From assembly GCF_002113885.1 (NCBI RefSeq), contig NW_018407065.1, forward strand, positions 1,068,436 through 1,132,435: 64,000 nucleotides of DNA, in the 5' to 3' direction. The stretch is from Mizuhopecten yessoensis. Its lineage: Eukaryota. Under the pieces are notes generated by a model, which saw only the letters and a list, made by a program, of their open reading frames with translations, had not been told where the DNA came from and did not search any database. The translations under genes were made by a program, and so were the position numbers. The stretch's first letter is position 1. Every line of letters begins with the position of its first letter. Below are positions 23,498-50,800 of the stretch, one piece after another.

Positions 23498-23530
<33 letters not shown>

Positions 23531-26500: not shown

Positions 26501-29500
26501 TTTAACATTAAATGAATTAAATAAAAATGTGTTTCTCTTTCTAAAACATCTACAAAAATGGGGGGTCAGTGTTTTTCTTTTTTTGTCCCATTATCATTTG
26601 TGTATTTTTTTTACCTTTTTCGGAGTCAAAAATCAAAAGTGCTTCAGTTACATTAAATACGTAAATTTTTTATAAATAATGTATAATTTTCCAGTTTTTT
26701 GCATACTAATTTTATCATATTGAACATTATAAAGTTGTACAGCAAAATTGACCCTGCTACAATTAAAAATGGCAACACAATGACAATTTAAGTGATCAAT
26801 CTAGTGTCAAAAAGGTGAAATTTTGGCCTTTTTTGAAGCGCAAGAAATACACATTTTCAAAATGGCCGCCAAATTGGTAATTTTTTTAAATTCTTGTAAA
26901 ATAAGTTCTACAAACAACAGGCATCTAGTTTTTTGTCATATTTCTCAGATGCGTGTTTGCTAATAAACCTATCATAATTTGTTAAATATTACAAAAATCC
27001 ATTACACCAGATCAAAACGAGACTTGAATGTGATTGAAACCTCAGACGAGTACATCCTTAAGGTGCCAAGGTTTTTATAGAAGAGTGTCAAATTATAAAA
27101 CAACATTTTCTTTTTTCCCTCTTTTACAAGTGTTATCATTAAATGTAATCATTGATAAAATCTATTTATCTTGTCTTTTAATTGAAGGAGGAAGCCTGGT
27201 CCAAAAACAAATGCAGAACAATACAAGAAAGCTGAAGAGAGAGAAATGGAAACAATTGCTATGATGAGAAAAGAGTTGGTTAAAAAACGTAAACTAGCCC
27301 AAGAGTCATACAAGAAAGCTATGACTGGCTCAGCCTGCCAACCTGTTCATGCTCATAAATTGCCAACGATGCCGCAGGGTTTCCAGTTCCAGACTGACAG
27401 TCGTATTAAGTCTCATGGGATGGAGACCCGCAGTGAGAGTAGAGAGAGGGACTTCGTGGAAACCCTTCGTTCCAGCACTGCAACTAAGACGTCTGTTAGT
27501 ACTTGTTCCTGTCGTTTGTGTACTGGTATCTGAGAAACTTTTCAACAACATTGATAAGTAATAACGGAAGTCTCATTTTTTTTTTCAGATATCAATTATA
27601 AATGTGTAAAAAATATATTTTTATATCATAGTTCATGATTATAGTTATGGTCAAAGAGCTATGTGTTGTTTATAGTTGCTCACATTGTCACAGTATTGAT
27701 TGATGGATTAATTGAAATTAATCTTAAGCCCAAACAGGTAGCAAACCAAAAGGGCCCAACCATCCCTAAACCATTCAAACTGACCGACTGTAAGAAGCAT
27801 AAGATGGGCAGTATGGATGACCTGTCTAAGGCTGATACCTTCCAGAGTATGGCTGAAAAGGTGAAGGCCTTCCACAGGCAGACACCAGAACGCTTCAAAT
27901 CCAGGGGTCGTATGTGCAGTGCCAACAAAGGTAGGACAAAATCTAGCTCCTGGGGTATTATTGGCAGTGCCGACAGAGGTAGGAAAAAATCTAGATCCTG
28001 GGGGATTATTGGCAGTGCCGACAGAAGTAGGATAAAATCTAGCTCCCGGGGTATTATTGGCAGTGCCGCCAGAGGTAGGATAAAATCTAGCTACTGGGGT
28101 ATTATTGGCAGTGACGACAGAGGTAGGATAAAATCTACCTCCTGGGGTATTATTGGCAGGGCAGACAGAGGTAGGATAAAATCTAGCTCCTGGGGTATTA
28201 TTGGCAGTGCCGACAGAGGTAGGATAGAATCTAGCTCCTGCGGTATTATTGGCAGTGCCTGTAGATGTATGACTAAAACTAATTGGCATTTTCAATTAAG
28301 ACTTTGCAATAGAGCACCCCTTCAGACAACATTTTTGTCAGGAGACAAAAGCCTGTTTAAAAAAATAATTAGTGGAATATTCTCGGTTTCCTATATTTTT
28401 CCATGCATATGTTGTCCACTTAGTCTTGTGCAAAATATCAAAATATTCACCCTCCTTGTGAACTATAACAGTTTTTCATCAAATTAGCATAGGTATCCTC
28501 AATTTAGTTTTTTTATCCTCCCCAAAATACTTTCTGTTACTTTAGAAATGAAGAATTACGGTAATAAGTCAAAAGAATAAAAGTGCATTTTTGAATTACA
28601 GAAACCATATTTTGCTAATGCTCATAAACAGACACTGTAGACAGGTTTTAACTTACTTCTTTTGAATGACTGTATTATAGCAGGGCACAGGCTAACCAGC
28701 CATCCATTCGTCCTGACCAGGTGAAAATTGAAAAGGAAGAGTGGAAATTACAACCACACTAAGGACTTGTCCCGATGCATAGTGAAAAATAATATAAATC
28801 TACACTATTTCTATCACTTAAACATTGTGATGAATACTAAATGGATCTCTTTTACTAAGTTACTTTGGTTACACAGAGAGAGCATATTTCTACACTTCAT
28901 AATGCTCTGTAACTAACTGATATGAATCATGGAACAGAAGTTGTGAAAATGTGTCTTTTTCGCAAAGGGTATCAACAATAATAATACGACATGTTTGATG
29001 GAGGTAATCAAACATGCATGTTGCTACTTTCGATACGTAGGAAGTTTATGCATGATAAATACAAGCGGGAGTTTTCAGAAAAAAATGAGGGCTACGATAT
29101 GTCAGTTAGAATTTTTGAATAATTTATGCACGCTTGTTTTGTGTATGGGATGTCATCACAAGTTGTAATAATAATAATTTGAGGTTGTTGTATACCCCTT
29201 TATCACAACCTAGTTCATAGGTCGTCTCAAAGCGGTTCACAAATTATTATTCGTGGTTATAGGGCCTTTGCAACCAGCCATTACCTTTTTCAATTCCTGC
29301 GAGAGCATACAGCCGGAGCTGCCATTTCGGCGCTAACCGCTAGCATTCAACAATTCTAGCACTGCCTAAACCACATACTCATTTACAGCTGAGTAGACTG
29401 GAACAAGCGGAGTAAAGTATCTTGCTCAAAGATATAACACAGTGCCGTGCCGTGACTCGTAACATGCAACCCTTCGGTCACAAGCCCGGCATCCTACCAC

Positions 29501-32500
29501 TAGACTAGCTACCGTGCCTCCATTCATAAGTTGTATTGATGGTAAATAAAGATTTATAGGAAATGCACAATCTGTAAATATAACTGAACAAAAAAGATAG
29601 CAAATAGAGCATGAAATAGGGCATGGCAAATTGACCATCATTTTATTAATAAATTTCTCATAAAAACATGACATGGTCGTTATAAAAAGCGACACAAGTA
29701 GTAAATTAAAATGCCTTCAAATCGCCCTGCATCTGTGGTCCGTGGTCCTTGGTCTGTCCTTAAACAATTCTTCATATCGCTATTTCTCAGGAAGTACCAG
29801 AGGGGTCTTTCTCAAATTTGATATGCAGGTTTTCCTTGCTCCCTCGTTGTGCAGGTTAAATTTTGAGACTGATCAGATAAATAAAAAGGCCGACAGGCAG
29901 CCATCTTGGTTTTTGACAGTGAAGGTTTGTTATGGCTATTACTCAGGAAGTACTGGCCATGGAGAGATCTCTTGTTCATAATCTCAGGTGCACAATAACA
30001 TTTCCTGAGTGGAATTTTTCTTACACTAGGCACAGTGCCTAGTTGTTTAAAATATTAAACCTGAACCCTGAATTGGCACTGTAAAGTTTTCACCTTTGGA
30101 CTAACCAATGCAGAAACCAGATTTTGTTTTTGTTTTTTGAGTGTGTCTATTTATAATTTTCTTTTGTGACAAAACAAACTACCAGTTTTTTAAGGGAATA
30201 TATTTTTAATCAAATCCATTGAATTTGATTCCTTATCAGGTGAAGGTGTCCGAGGAAGATCAAGATCACCAAACAAGGTATTGACTGTTCCAAAAACTCC
30301 ACAGTTTGAGACTCGAGGCAGAACCCGGTCTTATCACATACCAACTCACCAAGAAAGGGAGGAAGAGGAAGTTCAGGAAATGGTCAAGTACGTTTCAATG
30401 AATATAAGAGTCATTGAGGACCGTTTCAAAAACTATAACGGATAGGAGAGAAGGGGGAAGTGCTTCAAGCAAAAATGAGATCCCCTTTGGGATCATTGTG
30501 CAAACATTGAACCATCTTGAAAGGTTCTATGTATTATTTGCTCACCTGGAGGACAATAGTGAGCTTATATTATGCCGTGGCGCAGCGTCCGTCGTCAACT
30601 TTTTCTTTAAAACCTATCTCCTCCTTAACGCCAAAGAGGATTTCAACCAAATTTAGTCTGAAGCATCACTAGGGGAGGGCAATCATACTTAAATAAATGG
30701 GGTTGTTTCGACCCCTGAGGCCATGGGGGCGCGCTCTGAAGGGGAACTTAGCTAAATTTGCTTTAAAACGCATCTCCTCCTAAACGCCAGAGAGAATTTC
30801 AACCAAATTTAGTCTGAAGCATCAGTAGGGGGAGGGCAATCATTTCCTAAATAAATGAGACTGGTTCGACACCTGGGGCTAGAAAGACCGGGCCCCAAAC
30901 AGGAAAATTATCTAATATTTTGCTTTGAGACGCTGATACTGCTAATTGCTTGAGTGGATTGTACAAAATTTGGTCAAAAGCATTATTGAGGAAGAACAAA
31001 CATTTCTTAAATGAATCAGGTTGATTTGACCCATGCGGTCCTAAGAAATGGTACAGCCAGATTATATTCTATGGCGTAGTTTTCATAAATTGTTAAAAAT
31101 TGGTTTCTAGGTTTATGAAAGCTTATAGTTGAATGAAAATTAAAGTATTGTCTAATTACACCCTGTAATATGACATATTACTTATTTCAAAATCTGTTAA
31201 CATGACAACTCAATGGAGGGCCCTGATTAGTTGAAAGTCAGATATTGTGGTCCCAGTTGGGTTAGAACATAGATCGTATCTGGTTTTGAGGAAATTTCAT
31301 AGAAAGATGTACTAATGCATTCAGTTGCAATGACTTAAATATAAAACCAGGTGAGCGATACAGGTCCAATGGACCTCTTGTTGAATTTTTCTCTTCTTTT
31401 ATTTGTATGATTGCATTTTTGAGTCATGTTAAAGTAAATGCACCTTGTGCAATTTTTTTAACTTTTGATATTTTTGCAAATGCATTGGAGCATTCTCTTG
31501 TCTATATTTTAATATGGTTGAGTCTTTTGAACTGATTGCGGTTCTCTTAGCCTGTCCTGCTGAAGTCTTTAAGTAAACAAGCTTCGTCTGATTTTAATTT
31601 AGTTTTGTCAAATGATGACCTGGTATTCTGGCCCTAATTTCAATTACAATAGTTGTTGATAGGTCACCAAACTTAAACAAACCACGAATTGTGGTTTTGA
31701 TAATATATTTAGGCCAATGAGTTTTATAAAAGAAAATTCTAAGGAATGATTTTGTCATTTAAAATAACAATTGATTCATTCTGTTGACTAGGAATCAATT
31801 CAAAGCTCATCCTGTGAATGAGAGGATTTTGACCAACCCTAACACCGGTGTGAGGAAGGTGCCATCCAAACCTATAACAACGCCAGAGGAGTTCCACCTT
31901 ACTGCCCCAGACAGGCGGGCACAGGACAGTTCTACTGAGGAAGAGAAATTTGAGTTCCACGCCAAACCATTGCCTATAAAGATACTGGAAGGCCCAGTGG
32001 TAAGAGCGTACAAAAGATTTTACAATGATAAGTGGATTCAGTTTTGCTCTGTTAATTTTTATGAATTTATCATTGCATTATACAAATAAAATTAACGCCT
32101 TAGGTCAAACTTGGAATATCCCGCCCTTGACACATTGCATTCTGTTGGCAGTCTTAAGCTTATATAAATCGGAGTGTTTGACCAGATGTATCAAACCGCA
32201 TTGAGTTAAATAACCATCATAACTTTGATGGGTTCAATTGGACAAGACTCTATATATATGTGAATCCTGTAAATTTCATTCTACTTAGCTTCATTAAATT
32301 TTAAATTACCTTGTTGAAATGTGTTATCCTGAATCTGGAGTTGCAGTGTGCTACATTCTGCCTCATTGTTCGACTGTGCAGTCTATCCATGCTGTAATGG
32401 ATTTTTACTTACAGACATAAAGTTAATTATCCAAAGTCAGTTTTCTCTTGTCACTCCATGCCAGTTTCCCTCACACATGAGAACCTTTGTATGCTTCCAT

Positions 32501-35444
32501 CCAAGCAAACTAGAGTTATTTATTTGTTCATACACACAGTATCTCGATGAGCACACCAACAAAGCATGTCTTGACTTAACCCACTTCTAGCTAGGATTCT
32601 GCAAAGCTAGCTGACTATCTGTATCTGTTATTTATGATAATGTTACACATTCAAAATTCATAAGTTTTCATGATTGTGTACAACAGGGAGTAAAACCAGC
32701 GAAACAAGTGGCCCCAACAGTTCCTAAATCACCTGCATTTGCTTTGAAGAATCGAGTACGGATGCCTGCTGAAATGGAGGATTTTAAGGTACCAACTCTT
32801 TGATTATAAAATCACATTTTATTTGTGTGTAAAAGAAAGAAAAAAATAGTTAACACTGTCAGACTTACTATTCACATGTTTCCTGGTTAAGATTTGTTGA
32901 ATAGAACATGTTATTATTTAATTTCTGCAGATATAAAAGACAGTTTTGTACATCAGTCTACATTTATCAGTTCTAGATCTGCCACCAGATTTTTACAGAC
33001 CTATGAATCTGTACTTATATTCTGTTCTGCAGTCATGTTTAAAGACAAAATCATATGTTTTGTGTGTGATCAGGTGTTCTATGTTGATTTTTCGTTTCAG
33101 AATGAATCCCAGGTGAAGGTCACGGCTAACCCAGTACCTCATGCTGGAGTGCCATTCCAGCCAAAGCTAGGTCACAAGTGCACTGTTCCAGAGCCTTTTA
33201 CCTTTGAGGAAAGGGATCAAGATGTCAGGGCAAAGAAGGAAGAAAAAATCAAGGAAATTTTGGAAGAAGAGAAAAGAGTAAAAAAAATATTCTGATGTTT
33301 TCTTTTGTAACTTCAGTGAATATTTGTGCTATTATGACATTTGGGCAAATGCCTATCAAATTTTAAGCGTTGTAAATTCAGCGCAAAATTACTTTAATTT
33401 GAGGAATTTAGTACACGTAAAAATTGTCCAGATGAATTCACTCATTTCAAATATAATATTCTTCCAATTCAGGCTAGGGAATTCCAGGCTCAGAATTGTC
33501 CGAGCCCGACCTCCGACACACTGCCTCAAAAACAACCAAAACCAGCCACTCAGCCACAACCCTTCAACTTTGACATAGACAATCGAGGAGCCAAGCGAGC
33601 AGAGGAGTGGAGTCGTAAGGTACAAGTACATCACTTTGTCCTTGTGTTGATTGTTACACCACTTTGTCCTTGTGTTGATTGTTACACCACTCTGTCCTTG
33701 TGTTCATTGTGACATTACTTTGTCCTTGTGTTCATTGTGACATTACTTTGTCCTTGTGTTCATTGTGACATTACTTTGTCCTTGTGTTCATTGTTACACC
33801 ACTTTGTCCTTGTGTTCATTGTGACATTACTTTGTCCTTGTGTTCATTGTGACATTACTTTGTCCTTGTGTTCATTGTGACATTACTTTGTCCTCCTGTT
33901 CATTGTGACATTACTTTGTCCTTGTGTATATTGTGACATTACTTTGTCCTTTTGGTTACTGTTATTTCTTTTTGTCCTTGTATTCATCTTTTTATACTTT
34001 AAGATTAAGTGACATGTATTTTAAAATTAGGTTTTAGTTACAGTAACGACTACAATATATGAATTTAAGGTTTACACATTTACATTGCTATTAAATGTTC
34101 TCCTCTCACCTTTACAAGTGTGTAAAAAAGGATAATGACATATTTTACAGATAGGGCTGATGATAACTGCTATACAATAATCATGGTTGTAAGGTTACTA
34201 GGCTTATGGTTTACAGATTGAGGAGGAGCTACGACAGCAGAGACAACAGGCCACGTTCAAGGCGACCAACAGTGATGTTCTCATTAAGAAGCCATTTGTA
34301 CCAGCAAAGTCACTCAAACCACTAACAGGTGATCACAGAACTATATAGTCAAATGTACTTGATTAGAATGGAACTCTGCAACATTTTGCTGAACTAGTGT
34401 GTTGATTTTCTCCTGAACAATGACTGGTCACAATTTCTTAGAATAAAATTAAGCTAAGACTGAAGTGTTACCTGAACTTGGTCTTTGCTTTATACTTTTA
34501 TTATTGCAAATTATATAAATAAATTTTTAAGAAAAAAAACCCCAATATTCCAAAACCTTGCTCCAACTTCATTTTTTACAGAAACTTAAAATTTCTTAGT
34601 CATTGTATGAACTTAAGACTTGCAAATTATGTTGCAATAAAGAATTATGGGGCTATATATAATCCATGTACAATGTATATCTCAGATTTGAAATAATTTC
34701 ATTATTAACTGAACACAATTCACCATCCTCAACACATTTGGTCAGCTGACCATTTGCCTATGGAAATATGCTATTGAAAAGTGGAACAAGAAATTGATTA
34801 CATTGTAATATACTCTACTTATTAGAAGTGCAATGAACAAAGAAGTCTTAGCAAGTATTATATAATTATATACATTGCAATGGAAGAATTGAAATGGTAA
34901 TTGTCAATGCTATTGACATTGATTGTCAGACAGTGAAAGTGACTTATGTCAGGTGTGTGTCTGTCTATATTGACCATATCTCCAGTGTTGAGATATCTAT
35001 TATTTTGTATGTTTTATCAGACGAGAATGTAGCCAAACATCAGTTTCTGTTTATCACTCGGGGTGCAATCTCGCGTCAAGTTTCTGATTCACATGTCATA
35101 TCTTCTGTCTACATGAAAGTTAATTTCCTTGTTAATTCTGCTTTACAGATGTAAATGACTTTGAACTAAACACAGACAAGAGATCCAAATCACGGGAAGT
35201 GTATGAACAAAGGAGGAAAGCCCACGAGGCTGAGGCAGAAGCTTTGAAACGCCAAAGGGAAAAACATCAGGAGGAACAAGAAAAACTGGCCATTGCAAAA
35301 CTAAGAGCAGAAATGGTACCCAAACCTCAACCAGTGAAACGATTTAAGACCGTGGAAGTTTTACCAAGTGAAAGACAACCCACAGTTCCAATGTCACCTA
35401 AATTCTCAACAGACAATCGCCTGCGTAGCAATGTTCGTGTGTGA
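18903..35444 (+). CDS. TPX2: Targeting protein for Xklp2 (TPX2), ~879 aa, 14 coding exons: 18903-19008, 21916-22113, 22582-22704, 23630-23765, 24729-25115, 27188-27494, 27738(or 27729)-27930, 30240-30387, 31792-31999, 32687-32788, 33101-33277, 33473-33619, 34217-34328, 35149-35444
   Basis: Phase-consistent GT-AG chain. N-terminal Aurora-A-binding motif (WEYVAPQFVDF...DDWF), KLTIPNTPTF, FHRQTPERF, LTVPKTPQF, FKAHPVNERIL, FEFHAKPLPIKILEG, PKSPAFALKNR, and C-terminal FELNTDKR...LRAEMVPK...TVPMSPKF. Confidence 0.95.
19638..20720. mobile_element. Foldback element in TPX2 intron 1: ~500-bp imperfect inverted arms with subterminal ACCGAAACGG tandem repeats
   Basis: 19638-~20150 is the reverse complement of ~20239-20718, with scattered mismatches. 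The short spacer contains one N at 20238. Confidence 0.85.
23172..23531 (+). mobile_element. Truncated HINE/Helentron-type non-autonomous element, ending in poly-C and an N
   Basis: The 5' end TTTTTAGCTTACCTG...GTGAGCTTTTGCCATGGC and internal motifs resemble the complete element at 30534-31382. Confidence 0.65.
26073..27057. mobile_element. Non-autonomous DNA transposon, 985 bp, TTAA TSD, 17-bp TIRs starting GG (Kolobok-like)
   Basis: TTAA|GGATGTACACCTCTGAG ... CTCAGACGAGTACATCC|TTAA; TIRs match at 15/17. Confidence 0.85.
27914..28262 (+). repeat. 48-bp tandem array made of the TPX2 exon-7 end plus its 5' splice donor; 7 donor copies
   Basis: Unit GTAGGATAAAATCTAGCTCCTGGGGTATTATTGGCAGTGCCGACAGAG; GT at 27931, 27979, 28027, 28075, 28123, 28171 and 28219. 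Confidence 0.95.
29166..29520 (-). mobile_element. tRNA-derived SINE with a conserved-type central domain and (ATT)n tail
   Basis: On the - strand: tRNA-like head with A-box-like (GGTAGCTAGTCTAGTGG) and B-box-like (GTTACGAGTC) motifs, then TCTTTGAGCAAGATACTTTAC...CCAGTCTACTCAGCTGTAAATGAGTA, ending in ATTATTATT. Confidence 0.75.
30534..31382 (+). mobile_element. Complete HINE/Helentron-type non-autonomous element
   Basis: Subterminal inverted repeats GCTCACCTGG (30540) and CCAGGTGAGC (31347), 5' IR GCTCAC...GTGAGC, a short CGTCCGTCGTC tract, degenerate internal repeats, and a 3' hairpin AGGTCC-AAT-GGACCT followed by CTTGTT. Confidence 0.8.
33632..33985. repeat. 28-bp minisatellite (ACTTTGTCCTTGTGTTCATTGTGACATT), ~12 copies, starting ~12 nt after the TPX2 exon-12 donor
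   Basis: Direct tandem repetition. Confidence 0.93.
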
Positions 35445-36216
35445 TCACCACAATGGTCCTCTTGTAAATTTGTATCAAAGTTTGTGTATATCAGTAAATT
35501 TTTATGAAGGAGCAATGATTATTGGAGTTCTGTGAAAGCCATTATGATTGGACTTGGCCTCATCAAATATGATTTCCTTTGAAATGAATGTGGTATAAAT
35601 TTAAAAAGCAGTTGGAATTTTAATTATAAGTTAGACTCCTTCTAAACAGCTTTATAACAGTAAAGCTTGTTAGTATGAATTAATTTTTTTCAAGAAGGTT
35701 TGCTGTTAATGAAGATCTATTGTAAAGAGACAGAAAAAACTCATAGGTTTGCTTACGTAAAAACAAAATTAACAGGGGGGGGGAGGAGCTCCTATTTCAG
35801 GAAAAGATAAAAACTGTATGAGACCTGATTAAATTGTTTTTGTACCAACTTCTTTAACAACATCAGTTCTCAGAATACACATTTTCTTCTTTGCAACATC
35901 TGTATCTCGATTTTCCTGGTATAGTCGACAACAGCAATAAACAGCATTTACTTATCTTGAATATTTATTTATTACATATAATTTCCCGAGAATGAGTTTA
36001 GGACACAAGATAGACAGTAGCTTTGTTGCATGCACCCCTCCTTTATAGCATGTGAAATAGACAGGAAGTGTACCTGCGACAAGACTACTATTTTACCTGC
36101 TGTAAAGAAAGTTCTTTTATAGCACGGAAACCAGCATTACCTTTAAATAAAATCATTGTAATTTAGTTTTTAATGAAGAATTTAAGATAACCCAGTCTAA
36201 GACAATTCAAGCTAGT

Positions 36217-36420
36217 GATCATTTCGAGATACATGTAAATGTGAATTGATCATTTCGAGATACAGTACATATAAATGTGAATACATTTGAGCATTTCGAG
36301 ATACAGTACATTAAAATGTGCACATATTTGATCTTTTCAAGATACAGTACATGTAAATGTGCACATATTTGATCATTTCGAGATATATCGGCATGTAAAT
36401 TTGCATTGTTTTAATCATTT
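36217..36420. repeat. Degenerate ~41-bp tandem repeat (TGATCATTTCGAGATACAGTACAT...), ~5 copies, in the probable TPX2 3' UTR
   Basis: Direct repetition. Candidate AATAAA signals at ~35936 and ~37558, so UTR membership is uncertain. Confidence 0.75.
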
Positions 36421-37795: not shown

Positions 37796-39310
37796 TTTAG
37801 GTCACCTAGGACAAAGTCTCAAGTGACCTATTGCAATCGCCTTTTGTCCGTCGTCGTCCGTCGTGCGTCCGTAAACAATTAACATTTTCAACTTCTTCTC
37901 CAAAACCCCTGAACCAATTAAAATGAAATTTTGCAGAAACCTTCCATGGCCAAAGGTCAACAAAAATAGTTGCCGGTTTGGTCCCCGGCCCCCAGGGGCC
38001 TGAGGGGCGGGGCCAAATAGGGTCAAATTGACTATAATTTCAAAAATATTTTTCTCAAGACCCAGATATGGTAGAATCAAACCCTCTTCATAGATGGAAG
38101 GGTCTTAAGGTGCTCTACCAAAATTGTGAATTTTTTGACCCTGGGGTCTCACGTTTCCCCCTGGGGAGGGGTCAACTTTACAATAGTTTATATAGGGAAA
38201 TCGCATTTTGGACTAACATTTGTTTAATTTCCTTTGCAATTAATTCAATTTGGGTTATCATTATCAGTATTGGGTAGCAGTTTGATAGTATGCACATATG
38301 AGCCCTGACTGACCCCCCGGGGCTGATGGGAGGGGCCAAAAAGGGTTGAATTGACTGAAATTTCAAAAATCTTCTTCTCAAGACCCAGATATGGTAGAAT
38401 CAAACACTCTTCATAGATGGAAGGGTCTTAAGGTGCTCTACCAAAATTGTGAATTTTATGACCCTGGAGTCTCACGTTTACCCCTGGGGAGGGGGTAAAC
38501 TTTACTATAGTTTATATAGGGAAATCACATTTTGGACCAACATTTGTTTAATTTCCTTTGCAATTAATTCAATTTGGGTTATCATTATCAGTATTGGGTA
38601 GCAGTTTGATGGTATGCACATATGAGCCCTGACTGACCCCCCGGGGCTGATGGGAGGGGCCAAAAAGGGTTGAATTGACTGAAATTTCAAAAATCTTCTT
38701 CTCAAGACCCAGATATGGTAGAATCAAACACTCTTCATAGATGGAAGGGTCTTAAGGTGCTCTACCAAAATTGTGAATTTTATGACCCTGGAGTCTCACG
38801 TTTACCCCTGGGGAGGGGGTAAACTTTACTATAGTTTATATAGGGAAATCACATTTTGGACCAACATTTGTTTAATTTCCTTTGCAATTAATTCAATTTG
38901 GGTTATCATTATCAGTATTGGGTAGCAGTTTGATGGTATGCACATATGAGCCCTGACTGACCCCCCGGGGCTGATGGGAGGGGCCAAAAAGGGTTGAATT
39001 GACTGAAATTTCAAAAAAAAATCTTCTCAAAGACCCAGATATGGTAGAATCAAACACTCTTCATAGCATAGATGGAAGGGTCTTAAGGTTTATGACCCTA
39101 GTGTCTCACGTTTACCCCCTGGGAAGGAGAGGAGGGGGGGGGGCAAAATTTATTATGTTTTATAATGGCAAATGATACTTTGAATATAACATTTTAATAA
39201 CTTAATTGGAATTCTAACCCTGAGTTGACAGTTTGATACTTTGAAAATTTTGAGCCAGCCCTACCCCGAAGGGCTGTAGTGTGGAGCCCAAAGGAGTCGG
39301 TGTGCTAAAA
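37796..39310 (+). mobile_element. HINE/Helentron-type element carrying a near-identical 324-bp tandem repeat (~3.3 copies); 3' end degraded
   Basis: 5' TTTAGGTCACCT...AAGTGACCTA IR and a (CGTC)-rich microsatellite, then repeats. Duplicated spurious ORFs ending at 38381 and 38705 are offset by 324 bp. Confidence 0.8.
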
Positions 39311-40849: not shown

Positions 40850-41805
40850 TCAATGAAACAACGTCTGATCCACCCGAGCACCAAATAAGTGTCGCCATGA
40901 CAATGGAATCTTCCATCCTGGCAGTGGTTTAATGATTTGTCCATCTTCTCTTTTCTTTGGCTGAAATATAACAAATGATTACTCTATTACTCAAAAGTTT
41001 AAATGAGATTTTTCAACACTGGATAAGTATCGACATATATAGTCTCAGTCTAAGAAATAATGCGCTATAGCCAAAATTCATTGTACAATTTTTAAGTTTA
41101 TGAGATTATTTTTTGCCCAGGGAATAATATGAAAAACAAGAATGTTCAATAAGTGTATTTACATTCTGTTTAACTGTATGTAACAGGTAGGTGGTAGCTA
41201 TAGACAGGCGATAGTTTTAGATGGGAGGTAGCTATAGACGGGTGAAAACTAGAACTGTAAGCCAAAGGCTAACTTATACCCCCGCTGCTATATACACCAG
41301 AACTGTAAGTTAAAGGCTTACTAAGGCAAAGCATTGCAAAGCAATCCATAGTCTCCCATCAGTAACAAGTATTCCACACAAAGGGGCATACCTCCATCAA
41401 AAAAGGTTGAAATCTCAAATTAAAATGCTGGTGCACAACTACATAAGATACCGATCATTTATGCAAAGTTTCAATGAAATCCACCTGTTAGTAAAGAAGG
41501 AGTGGAACAGACAGGTTTTTCACACAAAGGGGCACAACTCCATCAAAAAGGGTCGTAATCCCAAATTAAATTGCCGGTGCACAACTACTGATCATTCATG
41601 CAAAGTTTTCATGAAATCCATTTGTTAATTTTAATTAAGGAGGAGTTTTCCGGACAAGTATTTGGCAAAGGGGGCATAACTCCATCAAAAAGGGTCGAAA
41701 TCCCAAATTAAATTGCCGGTGCACAACTACTGATCATTCATGCAAAGTTTAAACGAAATCCACCTGTTAATTAAGGAGGAGTTTTCCGGACAAGTTACTG
41801 CGGGC

Positions 41806-41837
<32 letters not shown>

Positions 41838-44800
41838 GGTTAATTCTAGTAGAACCCCCTAACTTCGTTGCGGGGGTATAACTACAGATATGTCTGGTAG
41901 GTAGCTATACACAGGTGATAGTTTTAGATTGGAGGTAGCAGTAGACAAGTGATAGTTTTAGATGGGAGGCAAGTGGTATTTTTAGATGGGAGGTAGCTGT
42001 AGACAGTTGGTATTTTTAGATGGGAGGCAGCTATAGATAGGTGGTAGTTTTAAACGGGAGGTAGCTATAGACTGATGATATTTTTAGATGGGAGGTAGCT
42101 ATAGACAGGTGGTATTTTTAGATGGGAGGCAGGTGGTATTTTTAGATGGGAGGTAGCTGTAGACAGTTGGTATTTTCAGATGGGAGGCAGCTATAGATAG
42201 GTGGTAGTATTAAACGGGAGGTAGCTATAGACTGATGATATTTTTAGATGGGAGGTAGCTATAGACAGGTGGTAATTTTAGATGGGAGGCAGCTGTAGAC
42301 AGATAGTAGTTTTAAATGGGAGGTAGCTATAGACAGGGGGTATTTTCAGAAGGGAGGCAGCTGTAGACAGGTGGTAGTTTTAAATGGCAGGTAGCTATAG
42401 ACAGATGGTAGTTTTAAATGGGAGGCAGCTGTAGACAGGTGGTAGTTTTAGATGGGAGGTAGCTGTAAACAGGTGGTAGTTTTAAACGGGGGGGTAGCTA
42501 TAGATAGGTGGTAGTTTTAGATGGGAGGCAGCTGTAGACAGGTGGAATTTTTAGATGGGGGGCAGCTTTAGATAGGTGGTAGTTTTAAACGGGAGGTAGC
42601 TATAGTCTGATGATATTTTTAGATGGGAGGTAGCTGTTTACAGATGGGAGGCAGCTGTAGACAGGTGGAATTTTTAGATGGGGGGCAGCTTTAGATAGGT
42701 GGTAGTTTTAAACGGGAGGTAGCTATAGTCTGATGATATTTTTAGATGGGAGGTAGCTGTAGACAGGTGGTAGTTTTAGATGGTTGGCAGCTGTAGACAG
42801 GTGGTATTTTTAGATGGGAGGTAGCTATAGACAGATGGGAGGCAGCTGTAGACAGGTGGTATTTTTAGATGGGAGGCAGCTTTAGATAGGTGGTAGTTTT
42901 AAACGGGAGGTAGCTATAGACAGGGGGTATTTTCAGAAGGGAGAGGCAGCTGTAGACAGGTGGTAGTTTTAAATGGCAGGTAGCTATAGACAGATGGTAG
43001 TTTTAAATGGGAGGCAGCTGTAGACAGGTGGTAGTTTTAGATGGGAGGCAGCTGTAGACAGGTGGTATTTTTAGATGGGAGGCAGCTTTAGATGGGTGGT
43101 AGTTTTAAACGGGAGGTAGCTATAGACAGGGGGTATTTTCAGAAGGGAGAGGCAGCTGTAGACAGGTGGTAGTTTTAAATGGCAGGTAGCTATAGACAGA
43201 TGGTAGTTTTAAATGGGAGGCAGCTGTAGACAGGTGGTAGTTTTAGATGGGAGGCAGCTGTAGACAGGTGGGAGGCAGCTGTAGACAGATGGGAGGTAGC
43301 TGTAGACAGATGGGAGGCAGTTGTAGACACATGGGAGGCAGCTGTAGACAGGTGGTAGTTTTAGATGGTTGGCAGCTGTAGACAGGTGGGATTTTTAGAT
43401 GGGAGGAAGCTGTAGACAGATGGGAGGTAGCTGTAGACAGATGGTAGCTATAGACTGATGATATTTTTAGATGGGAGGTAGCTATAGACAGGTGGTATTT
43501 TTAGATGGGAGGCAGGTGGTATTTTTAGATGGGAGGTAGCTGTAGACAGATGGGAGGCAGCTTTAGACAGGTGGTATTTTAAGATGGGAGGTAGCTGGAG
43601 ACAGATGGGAGGCAGCTGTAGACAGATGGGATGCTGTTGTAGACATATTGGAGTCAGCTAAAGACAGATAGGAGGTAGCTGTAGACAGATGGGAGGCAGC
43701 TGTAGACGGATGGGAGGCAGCTGAAGACAGGTGGTATTTTTAGGAGGGAGGAAGCTGTAGACAGATGGGAGGCAGCTGTAGACAGATGGGATGCTGTTGT
43801 AGACATATTGGAGTCAGCTGTAGACAGATAGGAGGTAGCTGTAGACAGATGGGAGGCAGCTGTAGACAGATGGGAGGTAGCTGTAGACAGATGGGAGGCA
43901 GCTGTGACAGATGGGAGGTAGCTGTAGACAGGTGGTAGTTTTAAATAGGACTTAGCTATAGACAGGTGGTAGTTTTAAACGGGAGGTAGCTATAGACTGA
44001 TGATATTTTTAGATGGGAGGTAGCTATAGACAGGTGGTAATTTTAGATGGGAGGCAGCTGTAGACAGATGGTAGTTTTAAATGGGAGGCAGCTGTAGACA
44101 GGTGGTAGTTTTAGGAGGGAGGTAGCTGTAAACAGGTGGTAGTTTTAAACGGGAGGTAGCTATAGATAGGTGGTAGTTTTAGATGGGAGGCAGCTGTAGA
44201 CAGGTGGTATTTTTATATGGGAAGCAACTGAAGACAGGTGGTATTTTCAAATTGGAGGTAGCTGTAGACAGGTGGTAGTTTTAGATGGGAGGTAGCTGTA
44301 GACAGGTGGTAGTTTTAGATGGTTGGCAGCTGTAGACAGGTGGTATTTTTAGATGGGAGGAAGCTGTAGACAGATGGGATGCTGTTGTAGACCTATGGGA
44401 GTAAGCTGTAGACAGATGGGAGGTAGCTGTAGACAGGTGGTAGTTTTAGATGGGAGGCAGCTGTAGACTGGTGGTATTTTTATATGGGAAGCAACTGAAG
44501 ACAGGTGGTATTTTCAAATGGGAGGTAGCTGTAGACAGGTGGTAGTTTTAGATGGGAGGCAGCTATAGATAGGTGGTAGTTTTAGATGGGAGGCAGCTGT
44601 AGACAGATGGGAGGCAGCTGTAGACGGATGGGAGGCAGCTGAAGACAGGTGGTATTTTTAGATGGGAGGCAGCTGTAGACAGGTGATATTTTTAGATGGG
44701 AGGCAGCTGAAGACAGGGGGTATTTTTAGATGGGAGGAAGCTGTAGACAGATGGATGCTGTTGTAGACATATGGGAGTCAGCTGTAGCCAGATGGGAGGT

Positions 44801-47800
44801 AGCTGTAGACAGATGGGAGGCAGCTGTAGACAGATGGGATGCTGTTGTAGACATATGGGAGTCAGCTGTAGACAGATGGGAGGCAGCTGTAGACAGATGG
44901 GATGCTGTTGTAGACATATGGGAGTCAGCTGTAGCCAGATGGGAGGTAGCTGTAGACAGATGGGAGGCAGCTGTAGACAGGTGATAGTTTTAGATGGGAG
45001 GCAGCTGTAGACAGGTGGGATTTTTATATGGGAAGCAACTGTAGACAGGTGGTATTTTTAAATTGGAGGTAGCTGTAGACAGGTGGTAGTTTTAGATGGG
45101 AGGTAGCTGTAAACAGGTGGTAGTTTTAAACGGGAGGTAGCTATAGATAGGTGGTAGTTTTAGATGGGAGGCAGCTGTAGACTGGTGGTATTTTTATATG
45201 GGAAGCAACTGAAGACAGGTGGTATTTTCAAATGGGAGGTAGCTGTAGACAGGTGGTAGTTTTAGATGGGAGGCAGCTGTAGACAGATGGGAGGTAGCTG
45301 TAGACAGATGGGAGGCAGCTGTAGACAGGTGATATTTTTAGATGGGAGGCAGCTGAAGACAGGTGGTATTTTTAGATGGGAGGAAGCTGTAGACAGATGG
45401 GATGCTGTTGTAGACATATGGGAGTCAGCTGTAGACAGATGGGAGGTAGCTGTAGACAGATGGGAGGCAGCTGTAGACAGATGGGAGGCAGCTGTAGACA
45501 GATGGGAGGTAGCTGTAGACAGATGGGAGGCAGCTGTAGACAGATGGGAGGTAGCTGTAGACAGGTGGTAGTTTTAAATAGGACTCAGCTATAGACAGGT
45601 GGTAGTTTTAAACGGGAGGTAGCTATAGACAGGTGGTATGTTTAGATGGGAGGCATCTGTAGACAGGTGGTATTTTTAGACAGGAAGCAGCTGTAGACTG
45701 CCTTTATTTATAGACAGACATGTAATAGATGTTTTCCTTGAGTAATGATTGTCAATCTCGATACAGTTTTCTCCTTGTGAGTACTAACCTTCATGTCCAC
45801 CAGGTCGAGCCACTGATTTAGACGAGAAGCCAGGAATATAGCGTCCTGGGAATTGTCTCCTTCTGAACAGAACATCAGCAGAACTACGACTGGCATATCT
45901 TTCCCACTGTAACAGACAGGTATAAAAAATACTTACTTGTAGTCAAGTGTTTTTATACACACATTTTTTCTTTATACACACATCAATGATGAAGGTCATT
46001 CAAGGTTGATTCTTTCAATCTGATTGACTGATGGTCTCCATCTTACTTGCAAAAAATGTTCACTTATTTTTTTTAGAAAACTCATAAAGTTGTTATATTT
46101 GTTTTAAGTTGCTATAATTGGTAAGAGGTACACACTAATAACTTTTGGGTCATTCTATCAGAAGTCCTTGTTTGGGTCATTCTATCAGAAGTCCTTGTTT
46201 GGGTCATTCTATCAGAAGTCCTTGTTTGGGTCATTCTATCAGAAGTCCTTGTCATTCCAAGTTAATTCCTACGCAAAATATCTTATGAGATGTGCACACA
46301 TTCAACAATTGTGGGCATATGAGTGTACCGTTCACAGTAATCTTGTTAAGTAAGAGAGGCCTAATGTATTAACTCTGGCTTACCATTCCTCCAGTAACCA
46401 CTGGCCCTGCCCCTCTTCATCTAGTTAGATAATTTTGTATTAACTCTGGCTTACCATTCCTCCAGTAATGACTTGGCTATGCCCCTCTTCATCTAGTTAG
46501 ATAATTTTGCATTAACTCTGGCTTACCATTCCTTCAGTAATGACTTGGCTATGCCCCTTTTCATCTAGTTAGATAATTTTGTATTAACTCTGGCTAACCA
46601 TTCCTGCAGTAATGACTTGGCTATGCCCTTCTTCATCTAGTTAGATAATTTTGTATTAACTCTGGCTTACCATTCCTCCAGTAATGACTTGGCTATGCCC
46701 CTCTTCATCTAGTTAGATAATTTTGTATTAACTCTGGCTTACCATTCCTCCAGTAGAGACTTGGCTATGCCCCTCTTCATCTTGTTAGATAATTTTGTAA
46801 AACTCTGGCTTACCATTCCTCCAGTAATGACTTGGCTATGCCCCCTCCTGGTACGTAGATATAATTAGGTTTTTCAGATCCATTCTGAAGCTCTTCTGGA
46901 GTGTTTCTACGTTCTAGATCCAACCAATTCAGCGGAGCACTCCGTAACATCTGGCAAGTCTTGGTCTCCTCCATACATTGGGAAGCAAGGAAACGAAGCT
47001 GATCTCTTTAAACAGATTCAGTAAGTTATCAATTTAGAAGAAAAATTAACGTTTATCATCTAAAGCTACTACAAAGTAATTATGACAAATAACTGAGACT
47101 ATTTTATATAAAAGATATTCATAACAATTTTTTATGTTGTCCTTTCACCATCATACAATACATGTTTGTTCCCTATACATATTGAGCATTGAGTATACAT
47201 GGGTCAAAGTCGTTCATTTAAACAAACCGTGTAGCCCTAACTCAAGCATGCTACAGACAAAATATGAACATTGTATACGGAAGAAACAGTTGGTAAAGAC
47301 AATTGTTTTGCTCTCTGAAATGTACACTCAGCATGTGATTCCTATTATTGATGGGGAAGTTTAATATAAATTGACTGTTAAGATAAAACCTACCCCTGAA
47401 GCTGTATGTTTTCTGTTAAGATAAAACCTACCCATGAAGCTGTTAGATTACTGCTAAAATAAAACTTACCCCTGAAGCTGTATGTCTACTACTAAGATAA
47501 ACATACCCCTGAAGCTGTATGTTTATTGTTAAGATCAAACTTTCCCCTGAAGCTGTAAGTTTACTGTAAAGATAAAACTTATCCCTGAAGCTGTATGTTT
47601 ATTGTTAGATCAAACTTTCCCCTGAAGCTGTAAGTTTACTGTAAAGATAAAACTTATCCCTGAAGCTGTATGTTTATTGTTAGATCAAACTTTCCCCTGA
47701 AGCTGTAAGTTTACTGTAAAGATAAAACCTGTCCCTGAAGCTGTATGTTTACTGTAAAGATAAAACTTACCCCTGAAGCTGTATGTTAACTGTAAAGATA

Positions 47801-50800
47801 AAACCTACCCCTGAAGCTGTATGTCTATTGTTAAGATAAAACTTACCCATGAAGCTGTTAGTTTACTGTTACGATAAAACCTACCCCTGAAGCTGTATAT
47901 CTACTTTTAAGATAAAACCTACCCATGAAGCTGTCAGTTTACAGTAAAGATAAAACCTACCCCTGAAGCTGTATATTTGTTGTTAAGATAAAACTTACCC
48001 CTGAAGCTGTATGTCTACTGTTAAGATAAAACCTGTCCCTGAAGCTGTATGTTTTCTGTTAAGATAAAACTTACCCATGAAGCTGTTAGTTTACTGTTAA
48101 GATAAAACCTACCCCTGAAGCTGTATGTCTACTGTTAAGATAAAACCTACCCCTGAAGCTGTATGTTTTCTGTTAAGATAAAACTTACCAATGCAGGTGT
48201 TAGTTTACTGTTAAGATAAAACCTACCCCTGAAGCTGTATGTCTACTGTTAAGATAAAACCTACCCCTGAAGCTGTATGTTTTCTGTTAAGATAAAACTT
48301 TCCCCTTAAGCTGTATGTTTACTGTTAAGATAAAACCTACCCCTGAAGCTGTATGTTTTCTGTTGAGATAAAACTTACCCCTGAAGCTGTATGTTTTCTG
48401 TTAAGATAAAACTTACCCATGCAGGTGTTAGTTTACTGTTAAGATAAAACCTACCCCTGAAGCTGTATGTTTACTGTTAAGATAAAACTTACCCCTGAAG
48501 CTGTATATTTACTGTTAAGATAAAACTTACCCCTGAATCTGTATGTCCAGTCGTTCCTCACTGCGACTGCTTGTCAGGATAACTAGTTTTTTGAAGGACT
48601 TATTAATTATCCATTCCTTCAACCACTTTCTAAACAGAGCCATTTTCCCCTGTGTAATAAATAGAAAATCATATTACACCTTTTAAAGTGCATATAGGCC
48701 CTATGTATAATAATTTATTTAACATTTCATTTTTTCCGGAGAGTTAAGGATTTTAAAATTCTCAAATAAACAAGCATTTGTTCTGAAACTGTTAGCTAAT
48801 GATGTAGTTTTGAAAAGTACAGAATTGGAAAAATGTTTGTATAATACACTGTATTAAGTGCGTCTTAATAGAACATAAGCTATATTGCATGTTAATTACT
48901 AATTTCGGAAGAAATAAAACAATATACTCTTGGCAGTAATGTTGAATAGAATTATCTTTTTCAACTGGTCCATCAGGCAAATAGACACTAACTTTTGCTT
49001 CCCGACAAACCAAATTTATTGACCCCAGCCTTTTAACTGGGATATTTGCTTGTTCTGATGTTGAACATGTATATTTACAGCATGACAATAAAAAGTTATT
49101 GTTTCATAAATTTAATCTCCCTCAATAAATTTGTAACAAGATGGTCACTACTGTGGCAAGTAACAGTTAAAAAATCATTTATTCAGAAGTATATGTGTAC
49201 AGACCTTTGGCCTTTAACAATGACCTTGACCTTTATTATGTGCAAAAGTACATGACAGTAATATTATCATGTCAAGTGATGCCACAAATTATCTAATGTA
49301 ACAAGTTCTAACAATATCAATTTTGTTGTCAGAATTAGGCCAAACAGACACGTGGTACTGTTGTGGCATTGTGCTGTCACAATGAAGACATTTGACATGT
49401 TTAAGCAAACATTCACATACACTAATCTTAATGGGATCAAAAAAATCTTAGACTATGCTTCCATTTCATATAAGATTCATGAAGCTTGTCCTGAAGTTTT
49501 CTTTTCAGAAAAAAAACAACTAGATTTGTTTTCATTCAATATCATCTGAGAGGAAAATCACTTAAGATCCTTTATATACAGTTGTATATATAACCCAAAA
49601 TAGTTCCATGCATAGACAAAAAAAAAGCAAATCGGTACCAGTACTTATAATACCATACCCGGACAAATGGAGCCCTCTGTTGTATCACCACCACTTTGTG
49701 TTCAATACTCTCATACACTGAAAAACAAAAACAGGGCAAACTTTGATATAACCCATCAATCATCAGCTGGCAACACAAATATAATACCTTGTTCTGTCTG
49801 TTAACTGTATGTTCGCTAAATTACTAGGGGCATGGACTATGACAAATTTATGTTACAAGGAGCATGGACTAGGAAATATTTATGTTACAAGGAGCATGGA
49901 CTAGGAAAAAAATATGTTACGAGAAGCATGGACTAGGAAATATTTATGTTACAAGGAGCATGGACTAGGACAAATTTATGTTACAAGGAGCATGGACTAG
50001 GAAAAAATGATGTTACAAGGAGCATGGACTAGTAAATATTTATGTTACAAGGAGCATGGACTAGGAAATATTTATGTTACAAGGAGCATGGACTAGGACA
50101 AATTTATGTTACAAGGAGCACATGGACTAGGACAAATTTATGTTACAAGGAGCATGGACTAGTAAATATTTATGTTACAAGGAGCCTGGACTAGCAAGAA
50201 TTTATGTTACAAGAAGCATGGACTAGGACAAATTTATGTTACAAGGAGCCTGGACTAGCAAGAATTTATGTTACAAGAAGCATGGACTAGGAAATATTTA
50301 TGTTACAAGAAGCATGGACAAGTAAGTACCAGATAGTTGTTACTAGCGTTTAATTATATCAAAAGTAGATTTGAAAGATTGCTGGAAGATTTTTTTTCTA
50401 ATCCAGTGAATTATGGATGGAATTATAAACACTATTGTTCGCAATTAGAAGATAATTCTATTATTGATCACTATACAATTTAATCCATAAACATCCATAA
50501 ACTGGTTTATTTGGATAACCAATCTTCCGGCTAATATTATAAATAACATAAAATAAATCTTATGATATAAAAGTCTCTGAGCTTACTGGTATTTTTGACA
50601 GAAAACATGATAAATGGAGGTATCTAATTGAAATCAACCAACCATCACAGCTTGTTACAAGTTTGCAGTCATTGAAGTCTTCGTGGGCGAATGGATCATT
50701 GCCGACCAGAGGGAGGATGCTTTCGTGGTGGATGTGACCAACCCTTTCCATCCATAGTGTGGAGATGAGTAGATCTACTGCTAGCTGTCCAACATTACCC

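What the first reader, a model, noticed from the sequence alone, without database searches (positions are those of the whole stretch)
27914..48545. Recurrent splice-donor tandem arrays: three unrelated minisatellites each built from an exon end plus its 5' splice site
Seen: within ~21 kb, three arrays of unrelated sequence share one architecture (TPX2 exon 7, 48 bp x7; PSMG2 exon 5, 72 bp x7; PSMG2 exon 4, 38 bp x~30). The first copy in transcription order is the real coding exon end and donor. The unit spans the exon|GT junction and is amplified into the intron, and most copies keep GTAAG/GTAGG. That is 3 of the 28 coding-region donors in this window, and no equivalent acceptor-spanning array was seen. 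Inference: this looks like a systematic process. Either tandem duplication is seeded at 5' splice sites, or donor-spanning duplications are tolerated because the upstream donor is used first. Either way it creates banks of competing donors or U1 sites, so copy number could tune splicing, NMD or protection from premature polyadenylation. It is also raw material for exon extension or intron gain by tandem duplication of AG|GT sites.
Basis: partly seen in the sequence, partly recalled or inferred. Interest (0 to 1): 0.9.

Follow-up and report, generated by a model that had tools for sequence, protein, structure and literature searches.

The report
Splice-donor minisatellites in scallop genes
Three tandem-repeat arrays in two scallop genes each start with the real end of an exon plus its splice donor; human genes have the same known architecture, and related scallops carry it at the same two PSMG2 donors while still splicing at the first copy.

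Summary
The window is Mizuhopecten yessoensis DNA. TRF finds the three arrays: 48 bp x7.2, 72 bp x6.7 and 38 bp x31. In each, the first unit is the true exon end plus GT. This holds for PSMG2 exons 4 and 5, shown by the species' own 277-aa protein and nine orthologues, and for a TPX2 exon.

The architecture is not new. Minisatellites whose first monomer spans an exon-intron boundary are described for human F7, IFI6 (6-16), CBS, LMNB2 and PDGF, where the upstream-most donor is used.

New here: Argopecten irradians has a 54-bp array of about 114 copies at the same PSMG2 exon-5 donor. Three RNA-seq contigs splice from its first copy across an 18-kb intron. Pecten maximus has decayed junction-derived arrays at both donors. 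Ylistrum balloti and four non-scallop bivalves have none.

The pseudo-donor GT is no better conserved than other columns, so nothing suggests selection for donor banks.

Random seeding in these two genes predicts 0.37 donor-spanning arrays against 3 seen (P=0.004, post hoc). Tandem repeats cover 21.5% of the window.

Best reading: tolerated, long-lived, donor-anchored minisatellites. A donor-specific mutational process is untested.

The parts
27738..27930 (+). It ends ...TGCAGTGCCAACAAAG|GTAGGA, phase 1.
   Evidence: PDB phmmer hits to Xenopus and human TPX2, E=2.8e-4 and 8.4e-3. The annotated 887-aa gene carries TPX2_importin and TPX2 Pfam domains.
27916..28259 (+). 48-bp x7.2 minisatellite. 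Unit 1 is the last 15 nt of the exon plus 33 nt of intron. All 7 copies keep GTAGGA, and a diverged 8th partial copy runs to about 28275. The exon frame stays open through the array (16 aa per unit).
30240..30387 (+). Next TPX2 exon, with an acceptor in matching phase. The 3' end is approximate.
33473..33619 (+). TPX2 exon conserved in Y. balloti. Its donor is AAG|GTACAA.
33628..33951 (+). 28-bp x11.6 array beginning 7-9 nt inside the intron. It abuts the donor but does not span it. Orthologous arrays exist in Y. balloti and P. maximus.
48531..48649 (-). PSMG2 exon 4. It ends ...ACATACAGATTCAGGG|GTAAGT.
47374..48546 (-). 38-bp x31 minisatellite. Unit 1 is the last 16 nt of exon 4 plus 22 nt of intron. 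23 of 31 copies keep GT. The units keep the ancestral Leu codon CTT where the exon now has ATT.
46814..47005 (-). PSMG2 exon 5. It ends ...GGAGGAATG|GTAAGC.
46365..46844 (-). 72-bp x6.7 minisatellite. Unit 1 is the last ~31 nt of exon 5 plus 41 nt of intron. 6 copies have GTAAGC and 1 has GTTAGC.
41895..45698 (-). 3.8-kb 34/21-bp array in PSMG2 intron 6, starting 91 nt after the exon-6 donor. It is context for the repeat load and is not exon-derived.

Best explanation
These are donor-anchored intronic minisatellites of the kind known from human F7 intron 7.

Origin (inferred): a short segment of 38-72 bp straddling the exon|GT junction was duplicated in tandem and then amplified by slippage or unequal exchange.

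Consequence: the spliceosome takes the 5'-most donor, so every further unit lies inside the intron and is harmless. This is shown for the A. irradians orthologue and for the annotated M. yessoensis PSMG2 protein. It is inferred for TPX2.

Asymmetry (inferred from published duplicated-splice-site experiments, not tested here): the mirror-image array over an acceptor would be pulled into the mRNA and removed by selection. That would give a donor-only pattern without any donor-specific mutation process.

Evolution: the extra donors evolve neutrally. The first unit cannot decay because it is coding sequence plus the splice site. It therefore anchors the array, and such arrays can persist or re-expand for a very long time in scallops, whose genomes are very rich in tandem repeats.
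For: - Anatomy.
- First-donor use in M. yessoensis: P0001 joins exons at the first copies, with no indel against orthologues. Use of any later copy in the 72- and 38-bp arrays puts TAA one codon after the junction.
- TPX2 products are 887, 886, 885 and 878 aa in four scallops, so the model carries no extra 16-aa units.
- Direct transcript evidence in A. irradians: cDNA contigs L009-L011 end exon 5 at L008 21032 and resume at 39103. About 114 units follow, 94% of them with GT.
- Derived state: Y. balloti and four other bivalves have single-copy donors whose intron starts are homologous to the intron part of the units.
- Units keep ancestral exon codons.
- Neutrality of the pseudo-donor GT against the unit mean: 83% vs 92% (M. 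yessoensis, 38 bp), 94-100% vs 93% (A. irradians), 95% vs 96% (P. maximus).
- Persistence: the TPX2 28-bp array is shared by three genera.
- Junction-derived arrays sit at the same PSMG2 donors in A. irradians and P. maximus.
- Repeat load: 21.5% of the window; 21.7% and 11.3% in published scallop genomes (PMC10225492, PMC5700196).
- Precedent and the first-donor rule: PMC1557585.
Against: - The in-window excess (3 seen, 0.37 expected, P=0.004) is larger than simple uniform seeding predicts.
- Five of 8 genic arrays start within about 100 nt of a donor, and none ends within 100 nt of an acceptor.
- Unit boundaries at the exon-5 donor differ between species: 72, 54 and 34 bp. This fits repeated independent seeding at one site as well as remodelling of one old array.
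- There are no transcript data for M. yessoensis itself.
- The TPX2 donor choice rests only on annotated protein lengths.
- Copy numbers for M. yessoensis come from a single assembly that I could not check against reads.
Confidence: 0.68

Rival explanations
1. Mutational seeding: 5' splice sites, or their DNA or transcription context, are hot spots for tandem duplication. Arrays would then arise at donors more often than elsewhere, independently in different lineages.
For: - Nominal excess in the window.
- The same two PSMG2 donors carry junction-derived arrays with different unit boundaries in M. yessoensis, A. irradians and P. maximus.
- M. yessoensis units share lineage-specific bases with the M. 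yessoensis exon copy.
- Several further arrays start just after donors.
Against: - The window was picked post hoc from a genome scan.
- The 28-bp TPX2 array shows that scallop arrays can simply be inherited for very long periods. One ancient origin per donor plus concerted evolution therefore explains the sharing.
- Other arrays in these loci are not enriched for donor-like motifs: 4 of 18 at >=7/9 matches against about 2.2 expected.
- 24 PSMG2 donors in four non-scallop bivalves and 6 in Y. balloti show none.
Confidence: 0.15
2. Functional donor banks: the reiterated 5' splice sites are kept by selection as U1-binding or decoy sites. They would tune splicing efficiency, NMD or premature polyadenylation of PSMG2 and TPX2.
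For: - Presence at the same donors in three scallop genera.
- Most copies keep GT.
- Downstream use would give a premature stop in PSMG2, so a regulatory unproductive isoform is conceivable.
Against: - GT columns are no better conserved than the rest of the unit, and worse in the 38-bp array.
- The P. maximus 69-bp array has lost GT altogether.
- Y. balloti and A. irradians lack one or both arrays with the same protein.
- Unit lengths and copy numbers differ wildly, from 3 to about 114 copies.
- Assembled A. irradians cDNAs use only the first site.
Confidence: 0.07
3. Assembly artefact: the arrays, or their copy numbers, are products of assembling repeats in M. yessoensis.
For: I could not inspect reads. 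From my own knowledge, not checked here, the M. yessoensis assembly is short-read based, so copy numbers may be inexact.
Against: - Units carry many private and nested variants and irregular higher-order patterns.
- There are no gaps inside the arrays; the window has only two single N, both elsewhere.
- Homologous arrays at the same donors exist in independent chromosome-level assemblies of two other genera.
- The A. irradians exon-5 to exon-6 junction that skips that species' array is confirmed by RNA-seq contigs.
Confidence: 0.04

Closest known systems
Human F7 intron-7 37-bp VNTR. The same paper lists IFI6 (6-16) intron 2, CBS intron 13, LMNB2 and PDGF intron 4 as further cases (PMC1557585).
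   Same: Each is a minisatellite whose first monomer spans the exon-intron boundary, so the donor is reiterated into the intron. Unit sizes are similar. Only, or mainly, the upstream-most site is used. The pseudo-sites are intact in sequence.
   Different: Here the hosts are bivalve genes. Three such arrays lie within 21 kb. Arrays at orthologous donors are seen in several genera. Copy number reaches about 114 (A. irradians). Polymorphism and splicing behaviour have not been measured in M. yessoensis.
Internal tandem repeats at exon-intron boundaries of human segmental-duplication genes (PMC2812944), and introns born from tandem arrays (Zhuo et al. 2007, known to me only through citations).
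   Same: Tandem repeats overlap splice junctions and offer alternative splice sites.
   Different: Those cases create new introns or alternative exon ends. Here intron positions are ancient and unchanged in all bivalves examined, and no new intron is involved.
Ordinary intronic minisatellites of scallop genomes. Tandem repeats are the largest repeat class: 11-22% of published scallop genomes (PMC5700196, PMC10225492).
   Same: Same unit sizes, identities and turnover. The window has at least 10 other arrays, and more than half of the PSMG2 gene is tandem repeat.
   Different: These three include coding sequence and a functional splice site in their first unit. That unit is under purifying selection and anchors the array.

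Membership tests
Donor-spanning (F7-type) intronic minisatellite | Head-to-tail array of several units of roughly 10-100 bp. | tested here: met
   TRF gives 48 bp x7.2, 72 bp x6.7 and 38 bp x30.9.
Donor-spanning (F7-type) intronic minisatellite | The first monomer contains the last bases of a genuine coding exon and its 5' splice site. | tested here: met
   PSMG2 exons 4 and 5: P0001 mapping and the orthologue alignment. TPX2 exon: PDB homology and phase match to the next exon. The TPX2 donor choice itself is inferred.
Donor-spanning (F7-type) intronic minisatellite | Downstream monomers repeat the donor sequence as pseudo-sites. | tested here: met
   GT is kept in 7/7, 7/7 and 23/31 copies.
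Donor-spanning (F7-type) intronic minisatellite | The upstream-most site is the one used in mRNA. | tested here: inconclusive
   Met for the orthologous A. irradians array by three RNA-seq contigs. Met for the annotated M. yessoensis PSMG2 protein. No M. yessoensis transcripts were available, and the TPX2 case rests on product lengths.
Donor-spanning (F7-type) intronic minisatellite | Copy-number polymorphism (VNTR behaviour). | not testable with these tools
   Only one M. yessoensis assembly is on record.
Intron gain by tandem duplication of an AG|GT-containing exon segment | A new intron, absent in relatives, lying between the duplicated copies. | tested here: not met
   All six PSMG2 intron positions are shared by scallops, oysters, pearl oyster, mussel and clam.
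Transposon-borne or foreign satellite inserted next to an exon | Unit sequence unrelated to the host single-copy sequence. | tested here: not met
   The units align to the exon end and to the orthologous single-copy intron start of Y. balloti, P. maximus and A. irradians.

The most novel reading that the evidence does not exclude
Scallops may carry a systematic class of donor-anchored minisatellites. The first unit (exon end plus 5' splice site) is held by selection, so it would act as an undying seed. Arrays would then persist or re-grow at the same donors for more than 100 million years. Genome-wide they would be enriched at donors over acceptors, and they would be a main driver of intron length differences (PSMG2 spans 4.6 kb in Y. 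balloti and 30 kb in A. irradians). A stronger version, with 5' splice sites as true mutational hot spots or pseudo-donor banks under selection, is not excluded either.
Probability: 0.3. Interest if true: 0.6.

Novelty: new member of a known kind. Interest (0 to 1): 0.38.

Why it matters
The finding does not reveal a new kind of element. Minisatellites that begin with an exon end and its donor have been known in human genes for decades and were used to establish the 'first donor wins' rule.

The scallop data add a natural experiment on a larger scale:
- About 100 intact copies of the authentic donor are spread over an 18-kb intron in A. irradians, yet the assembled transcripts use the first one.
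- Arrays built from the same two junctions occur in three genera.
- The units preserve older versions of the exon end.

If a genome-wide survey showed a donor-over-acceptor excess, it would give a simple selective explanation for where minisatellites can live inside genes. It would also help explain why scallop introns differ so much in length. As it stands, the result is a well-documented example, not a surprise.

Tried and rejected
- Pfam on single exons gave nothing for the PSMG2 and TPX2 exons. Identity came instead from PDB sequence searches and the one representative search.
- PSMG2 exon 4 alone found nothing meaningful in PDB.
- Searching the open frame that runs through the TPX2 array for transcript fragments or other assemblies found nothing.
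- I tried to sample more M. yessoensis genes through FMO paralogues, to estimate the genome rate of donor-spanning arrays. No M. yessoensis protein was returned, so no genome-level estimate was possible.
- P. maximus isoform X2 was not indexed. Isoform X1 and the A. irradians protein were reached through the Y. balloti cluster.
- The TPX2 'exon 7' orthologue lies just outside every fetched locus. That array therefore has no cross-species comparison.
- Hypothesis that scallop minisatellites in general carry donor-like motifs: 4 of 18 non-junction arrays reach 7/9 matches against about 2.2 expected, not significant.
- A second, 69-nt-period copy next to the P. maximus exon-5 donor, which would tie it to the 72-bp M. 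yessoensis unit, is only marginal (P about 0.06).
- The PSMG2 protein tree does not resolve the four scallops, so gains and losses cannot be polarised.
- Rfam and tRNA scans of the window were empty.
- The open frame through the 48-bp array is not evidence of coding. My rough estimate, not computed by a tool, is that a 16-codon unit is stop-free by chance in about 30-45% of cases at this base composition.
- Operator rules: spliced models were never joined for a search; exons were searched one by one by reference. The two single N (20238, 23531) were left as they are. No contig taken for human was met.
Full report
**What the window is.** A 63-aa translation of the putative PSMG2 exon 5 found one full-length protein at 100% identity (P0001, 277 aa). 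Its source calls it proteasome assembly chaperone 2-like of Mizuhopecten yessoensis. The locus fetched for that protein, from GCA_002113885.2, is identical to window 30850-63021. The same annotation places an 887-aa gene with TPX2_importin and TPX2 Pfam domains on the + strand ending near 35444. It also places a 430-aa FMO-like gene at 54780-59195. The window has two single N (20238, 23531), which I left alone. No contig I would take for human came up. Spliced models were never joined for a search; exons were searched one at a time by reference.

**The observation.**
- 27916-28259: 48 bp x7.2, 91% matches.
- 46365-46844: 72 bp x6.7, 94% matches.
- 47374-48546: 38 bp x30.9, 85% matches.

Written out in register in transcription order, unit 1 of each is the end of a coding exon followed by GT:
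- 48-bp array: 15 nt of exon plus 33 nt of intron.
- 72-bp array: about 31 plus 41 nt.
- 38-bp array: 16 plus 22 nt.

**PSMG2 junctions.** P0001 maps to seven coding exons on the minus strand. The protein reads ...LDIQIQG|DQLRF... and ...AKSLLEE|CGKD..., that is, from the first copies. An alignment with eight orthologues has no indel at either junction. Use of any later copy would place TAA one codon after the junction in both PSMG2 arrays.

**TPX2 exon.** The exon at 27738-27930 matches Xenopus and human TPX2 chains (E=2.8e-4; human residues 299-348). The next exon, at 30240, continues colinearly (human 359-396) and has the matching phase. All seven TPX2 donor copies keep the phase and the frame stays open, so sequence alone cannot say which copy is used. 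Annotated TPX2 products are 887, 886, 885 and 878 aa in four scallops, so the model does not contain extra 16-aa units.

**Donor retention.** GT is kept in 7/7, 7/7 (one GTTAG) and 23/31 copies.

**Acceptors and counts.** None of the 14 acceptors I could map carries an array. I mapped 13 donors, not 28.

**Is it more than chance?** I collapsed each of the eight arrays inside PSMG2 and the mapped part of TPX2 to one unit. I then dropped units of those lengths at random into the collapsed genes.
- The simulation gives 0.37 donor-spanning arrays on average, and three or more in 0.4% of trials.
- That is nominally significant. However, the window was chosen after reading, from a genome scan of unknown size.
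- Three donors against no acceptors is not significant on its own.
- Tandem repeats cover 21.5% of the window. Published scallop genomes report tandem repeats as the largest repeat class: 21.7% in Amusium pleuronectes (PMC10225492) and 11.3% in Chlamys farreri (PMC5700196).
- With that load, a few percent of donors would be hit by uniform seeding alone.
- I tried to sample more M. yessoensis genes to measure the real rate, but the search returned no M. yessoensis proteins.

**Where the arrays came from.** Ylistrum balloti has the same gene order (FMO, PSMG2, TPX2) and a 4.6-kb PSMG2 gene with single-copy donors at exons 4 and 5. Its intron starts align with the intron parts of the M. yessoensis units. 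The units are therefore amplified copies of the ancestral junction and not foreign satellite. Ostrea edulis, Pinctada imbricata, Mytilus edulis and Mya arenaria share all intron positions. They have some intronic arrays, but none at a junction.

The 38-bp units read CAG CTT CAG GG (Gln-Leu-Gln-Gly). Leu is the residue in seven of nine orthologues, while the present exon has ATT (Ile). That is its only difference from the unit consensus. The array is thus older than that substitution and keeps a fossil of the exon end.

**The same donors in other scallops.** The Y. balloti protein cluster held the Argopecten irradians and Pecten maximus proteins, and their loci were fetched.

*A. irradians.* Exon 5 ends ...CTGCAGGAATG|GTAAGACAGG. 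It is followed at once by 54-bp units made of about 30 nt of exon end and 24 nt of intron start.
- About 114 units lie in three blocks across an 18-kb intron.
- About 94% of the units scored at those columns keep GT.
- Three cDNA contigs assembled from separate RNA-seq runs encode the protein exactly. They align with exon 5 ending at the first copy (21032) and resuming at 39103.
- The units keep GAG where the exon now has CAG.

*P. maximus.*
- Exon 4 is followed by two degenerate further copies of exon end plus donor.
- A 69-bp x16 array follows. Its unit contains a segment matching the junction but without GT (P about 0.008).
- Intron 5 holds a 34-bp x63 array starting about 40 nt after the donor. 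Its unit aligns across the exon-5 junction and keeps GTAAG (P about 0.005 or less).

*TPX2 28-bp array.* This array starts 7-9 nt after another TPX2 donor in the window. It is present with the same period and clearly homologous sequence in the orthologous intron of Y. balloti and P. maximus. Scallop minisatellites can therefore be inherited across genera. One paper dates the Pecten-Amusium split to about 130 million years ago (PMC10225492).

*One origin or several?* The PSMG2 tree does not resolve the four scallops. Unit boundaries differ between species (72, 54, 34 bp). I cannot decide between one ancient array per donor, later remodelled, and repeated seeding. I lean to inheritance with turnover.

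**Do the extra donors matter?** Percent of copies matching the unit consensus:

| Array | GT columns | Unit mean |
|---|---|---|
| M. yessoensis 38 bp | 83% | 92% |
| A. irradians 54 bp | 94% and 100% | 93% |
| P. maximus 34 bp | 95% | 96% |

The P. maximus 69-bp array has lost GT. Nothing here indicates selection to keep pseudo-donors, or strong selection against them. Other arrays in these loci are not enriched for donor-like motifs.

**What is already known.** Borensztajn et al. 2006 (PMC1557585) state that several human genes contain minisatellites whose first monomer spans an exon-intron boundary, so that the donor is reiterated in the intron. They cite:
- IFI6 (6-16): 25 pseudo-sites.
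- CBS intron 13.
- LMNB2.
- PDGF intron 4.
- F7 intron 7: 37-bp units, 5-9 copies.

They show with 50 constructs that the pseudo-sites are functional, but the most upstream site is chosen. They also recall experiments in which duplicated donors or acceptors were both spliced at the proximal copy.

A donor-side array stays in the intron. An acceptor-side array would be included in the mRNA and lost to selection. Tandem repeats at exon-intron boundaries have also been surveyed in human duplicated genes (PMC2812944).

**Verdict.** The architecture is a known kind, now documented in bivalves. The best explanation is tolerated, neutrally evolving, donor-anchored minisatellites in a repeat-rich genome. 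'Seeded at splice sites' remains open. 'Tunes splicing' has no support.

The added value is the cross-genus recurrence at the same two donors and direct transcript evidence in A. irradians. A genome-wide donor-versus-acceptor count and M. yessoensis transcript data are the decisive missing pieces.

Noticed in passing
window 33628-33951; L002 21669-21846; L007 27093-27796: A 28-bp x11.6 array begins 7-9 nt after the TPX2 donor at 33619|33620. The same 28-bp unit (my hand alignment of the consensus units: about 86% identical to P. maximus) fills the orthologous intron in Y. balloti (decayed) and P. maximus (25+ copies, cut by the locus end). It is an orthologous minisatellite conserved across scallop genera.
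   Followed up: partly
window 41895-45698: A 3.8-kb array of 34/21-bp units fills most of PSMG2 intron 6 and starts 91 nt after the donor. It gives a strong GC skew (+0.5 to +0.6 on the + strand). More than half of the 12-kb PSMG2 gene is tandem repeat. The gene spans 4.6 kb in Y. balloti, 7.8 kb in P. maximus and 30 kb in A. irradians.
   Followed up: partly
window 48538 (exon) vs units 47374-48508; L008 21025 vs units: Array units preserve older exon states. M. yessoensis exon 4 has ATT (Ile) and its units have CTT (Leu, the common orthologue residue). A. irradians exon 5 has CAG (Gln) and its units have GAG (Glu).
   Followed up: yes
L008 38993-39099: In A. irradians, a 53-bp x2 duplication of the 3' end of PSMG2 intron 5 stops 5 nt before the exon-6 acceptor. 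It is the closest thing to an acceptor-side repeat seen. It does not include the AG|exon junction.
   Followed up: partly
window 19638-20718: A foldback element of about 1.08 kb. It has nested inverted arms at 86-100% complementarity and (ACCGAAACGG)n-like terminal subrepeats. It probably lies in a TPX2 intron or upstream region. The single N at 20238 lies inside it and was not filled.
   Followed up: partly
L002 7808-8686: The annotated 292-aa Y. balloti 'gene' with no Pfam hit coincides with a 30-bp x31.8 tandem array. It is probably a spurious ORF.
   Followed up: no
window 1-1087, 3938-6436, 8352-10184: Three large satellites (27 bp x41, 25 bp x98, 54-62 bp x32) lie upstream. The 845-aa and similar ORFs at 3999-6536 are read-through of the 25-bp satellite and are not genes.
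   Followed up: no
L007 12276-13362 and 14277-16378: The P. maximus intron-4 (69 bp x16) and intron-5 (34 bp x63) arrays each contain a segment aligning across the corresponding exon|intron junction. The 69-bp units have lost GT (AT or GC instead). The 34-bp units keep GGG|GTAAGG.
   Followed up: yes
window 23502-23531: A run of 29 C sits directly next to the single N at 23531. It was left as is.
   Followed up: no
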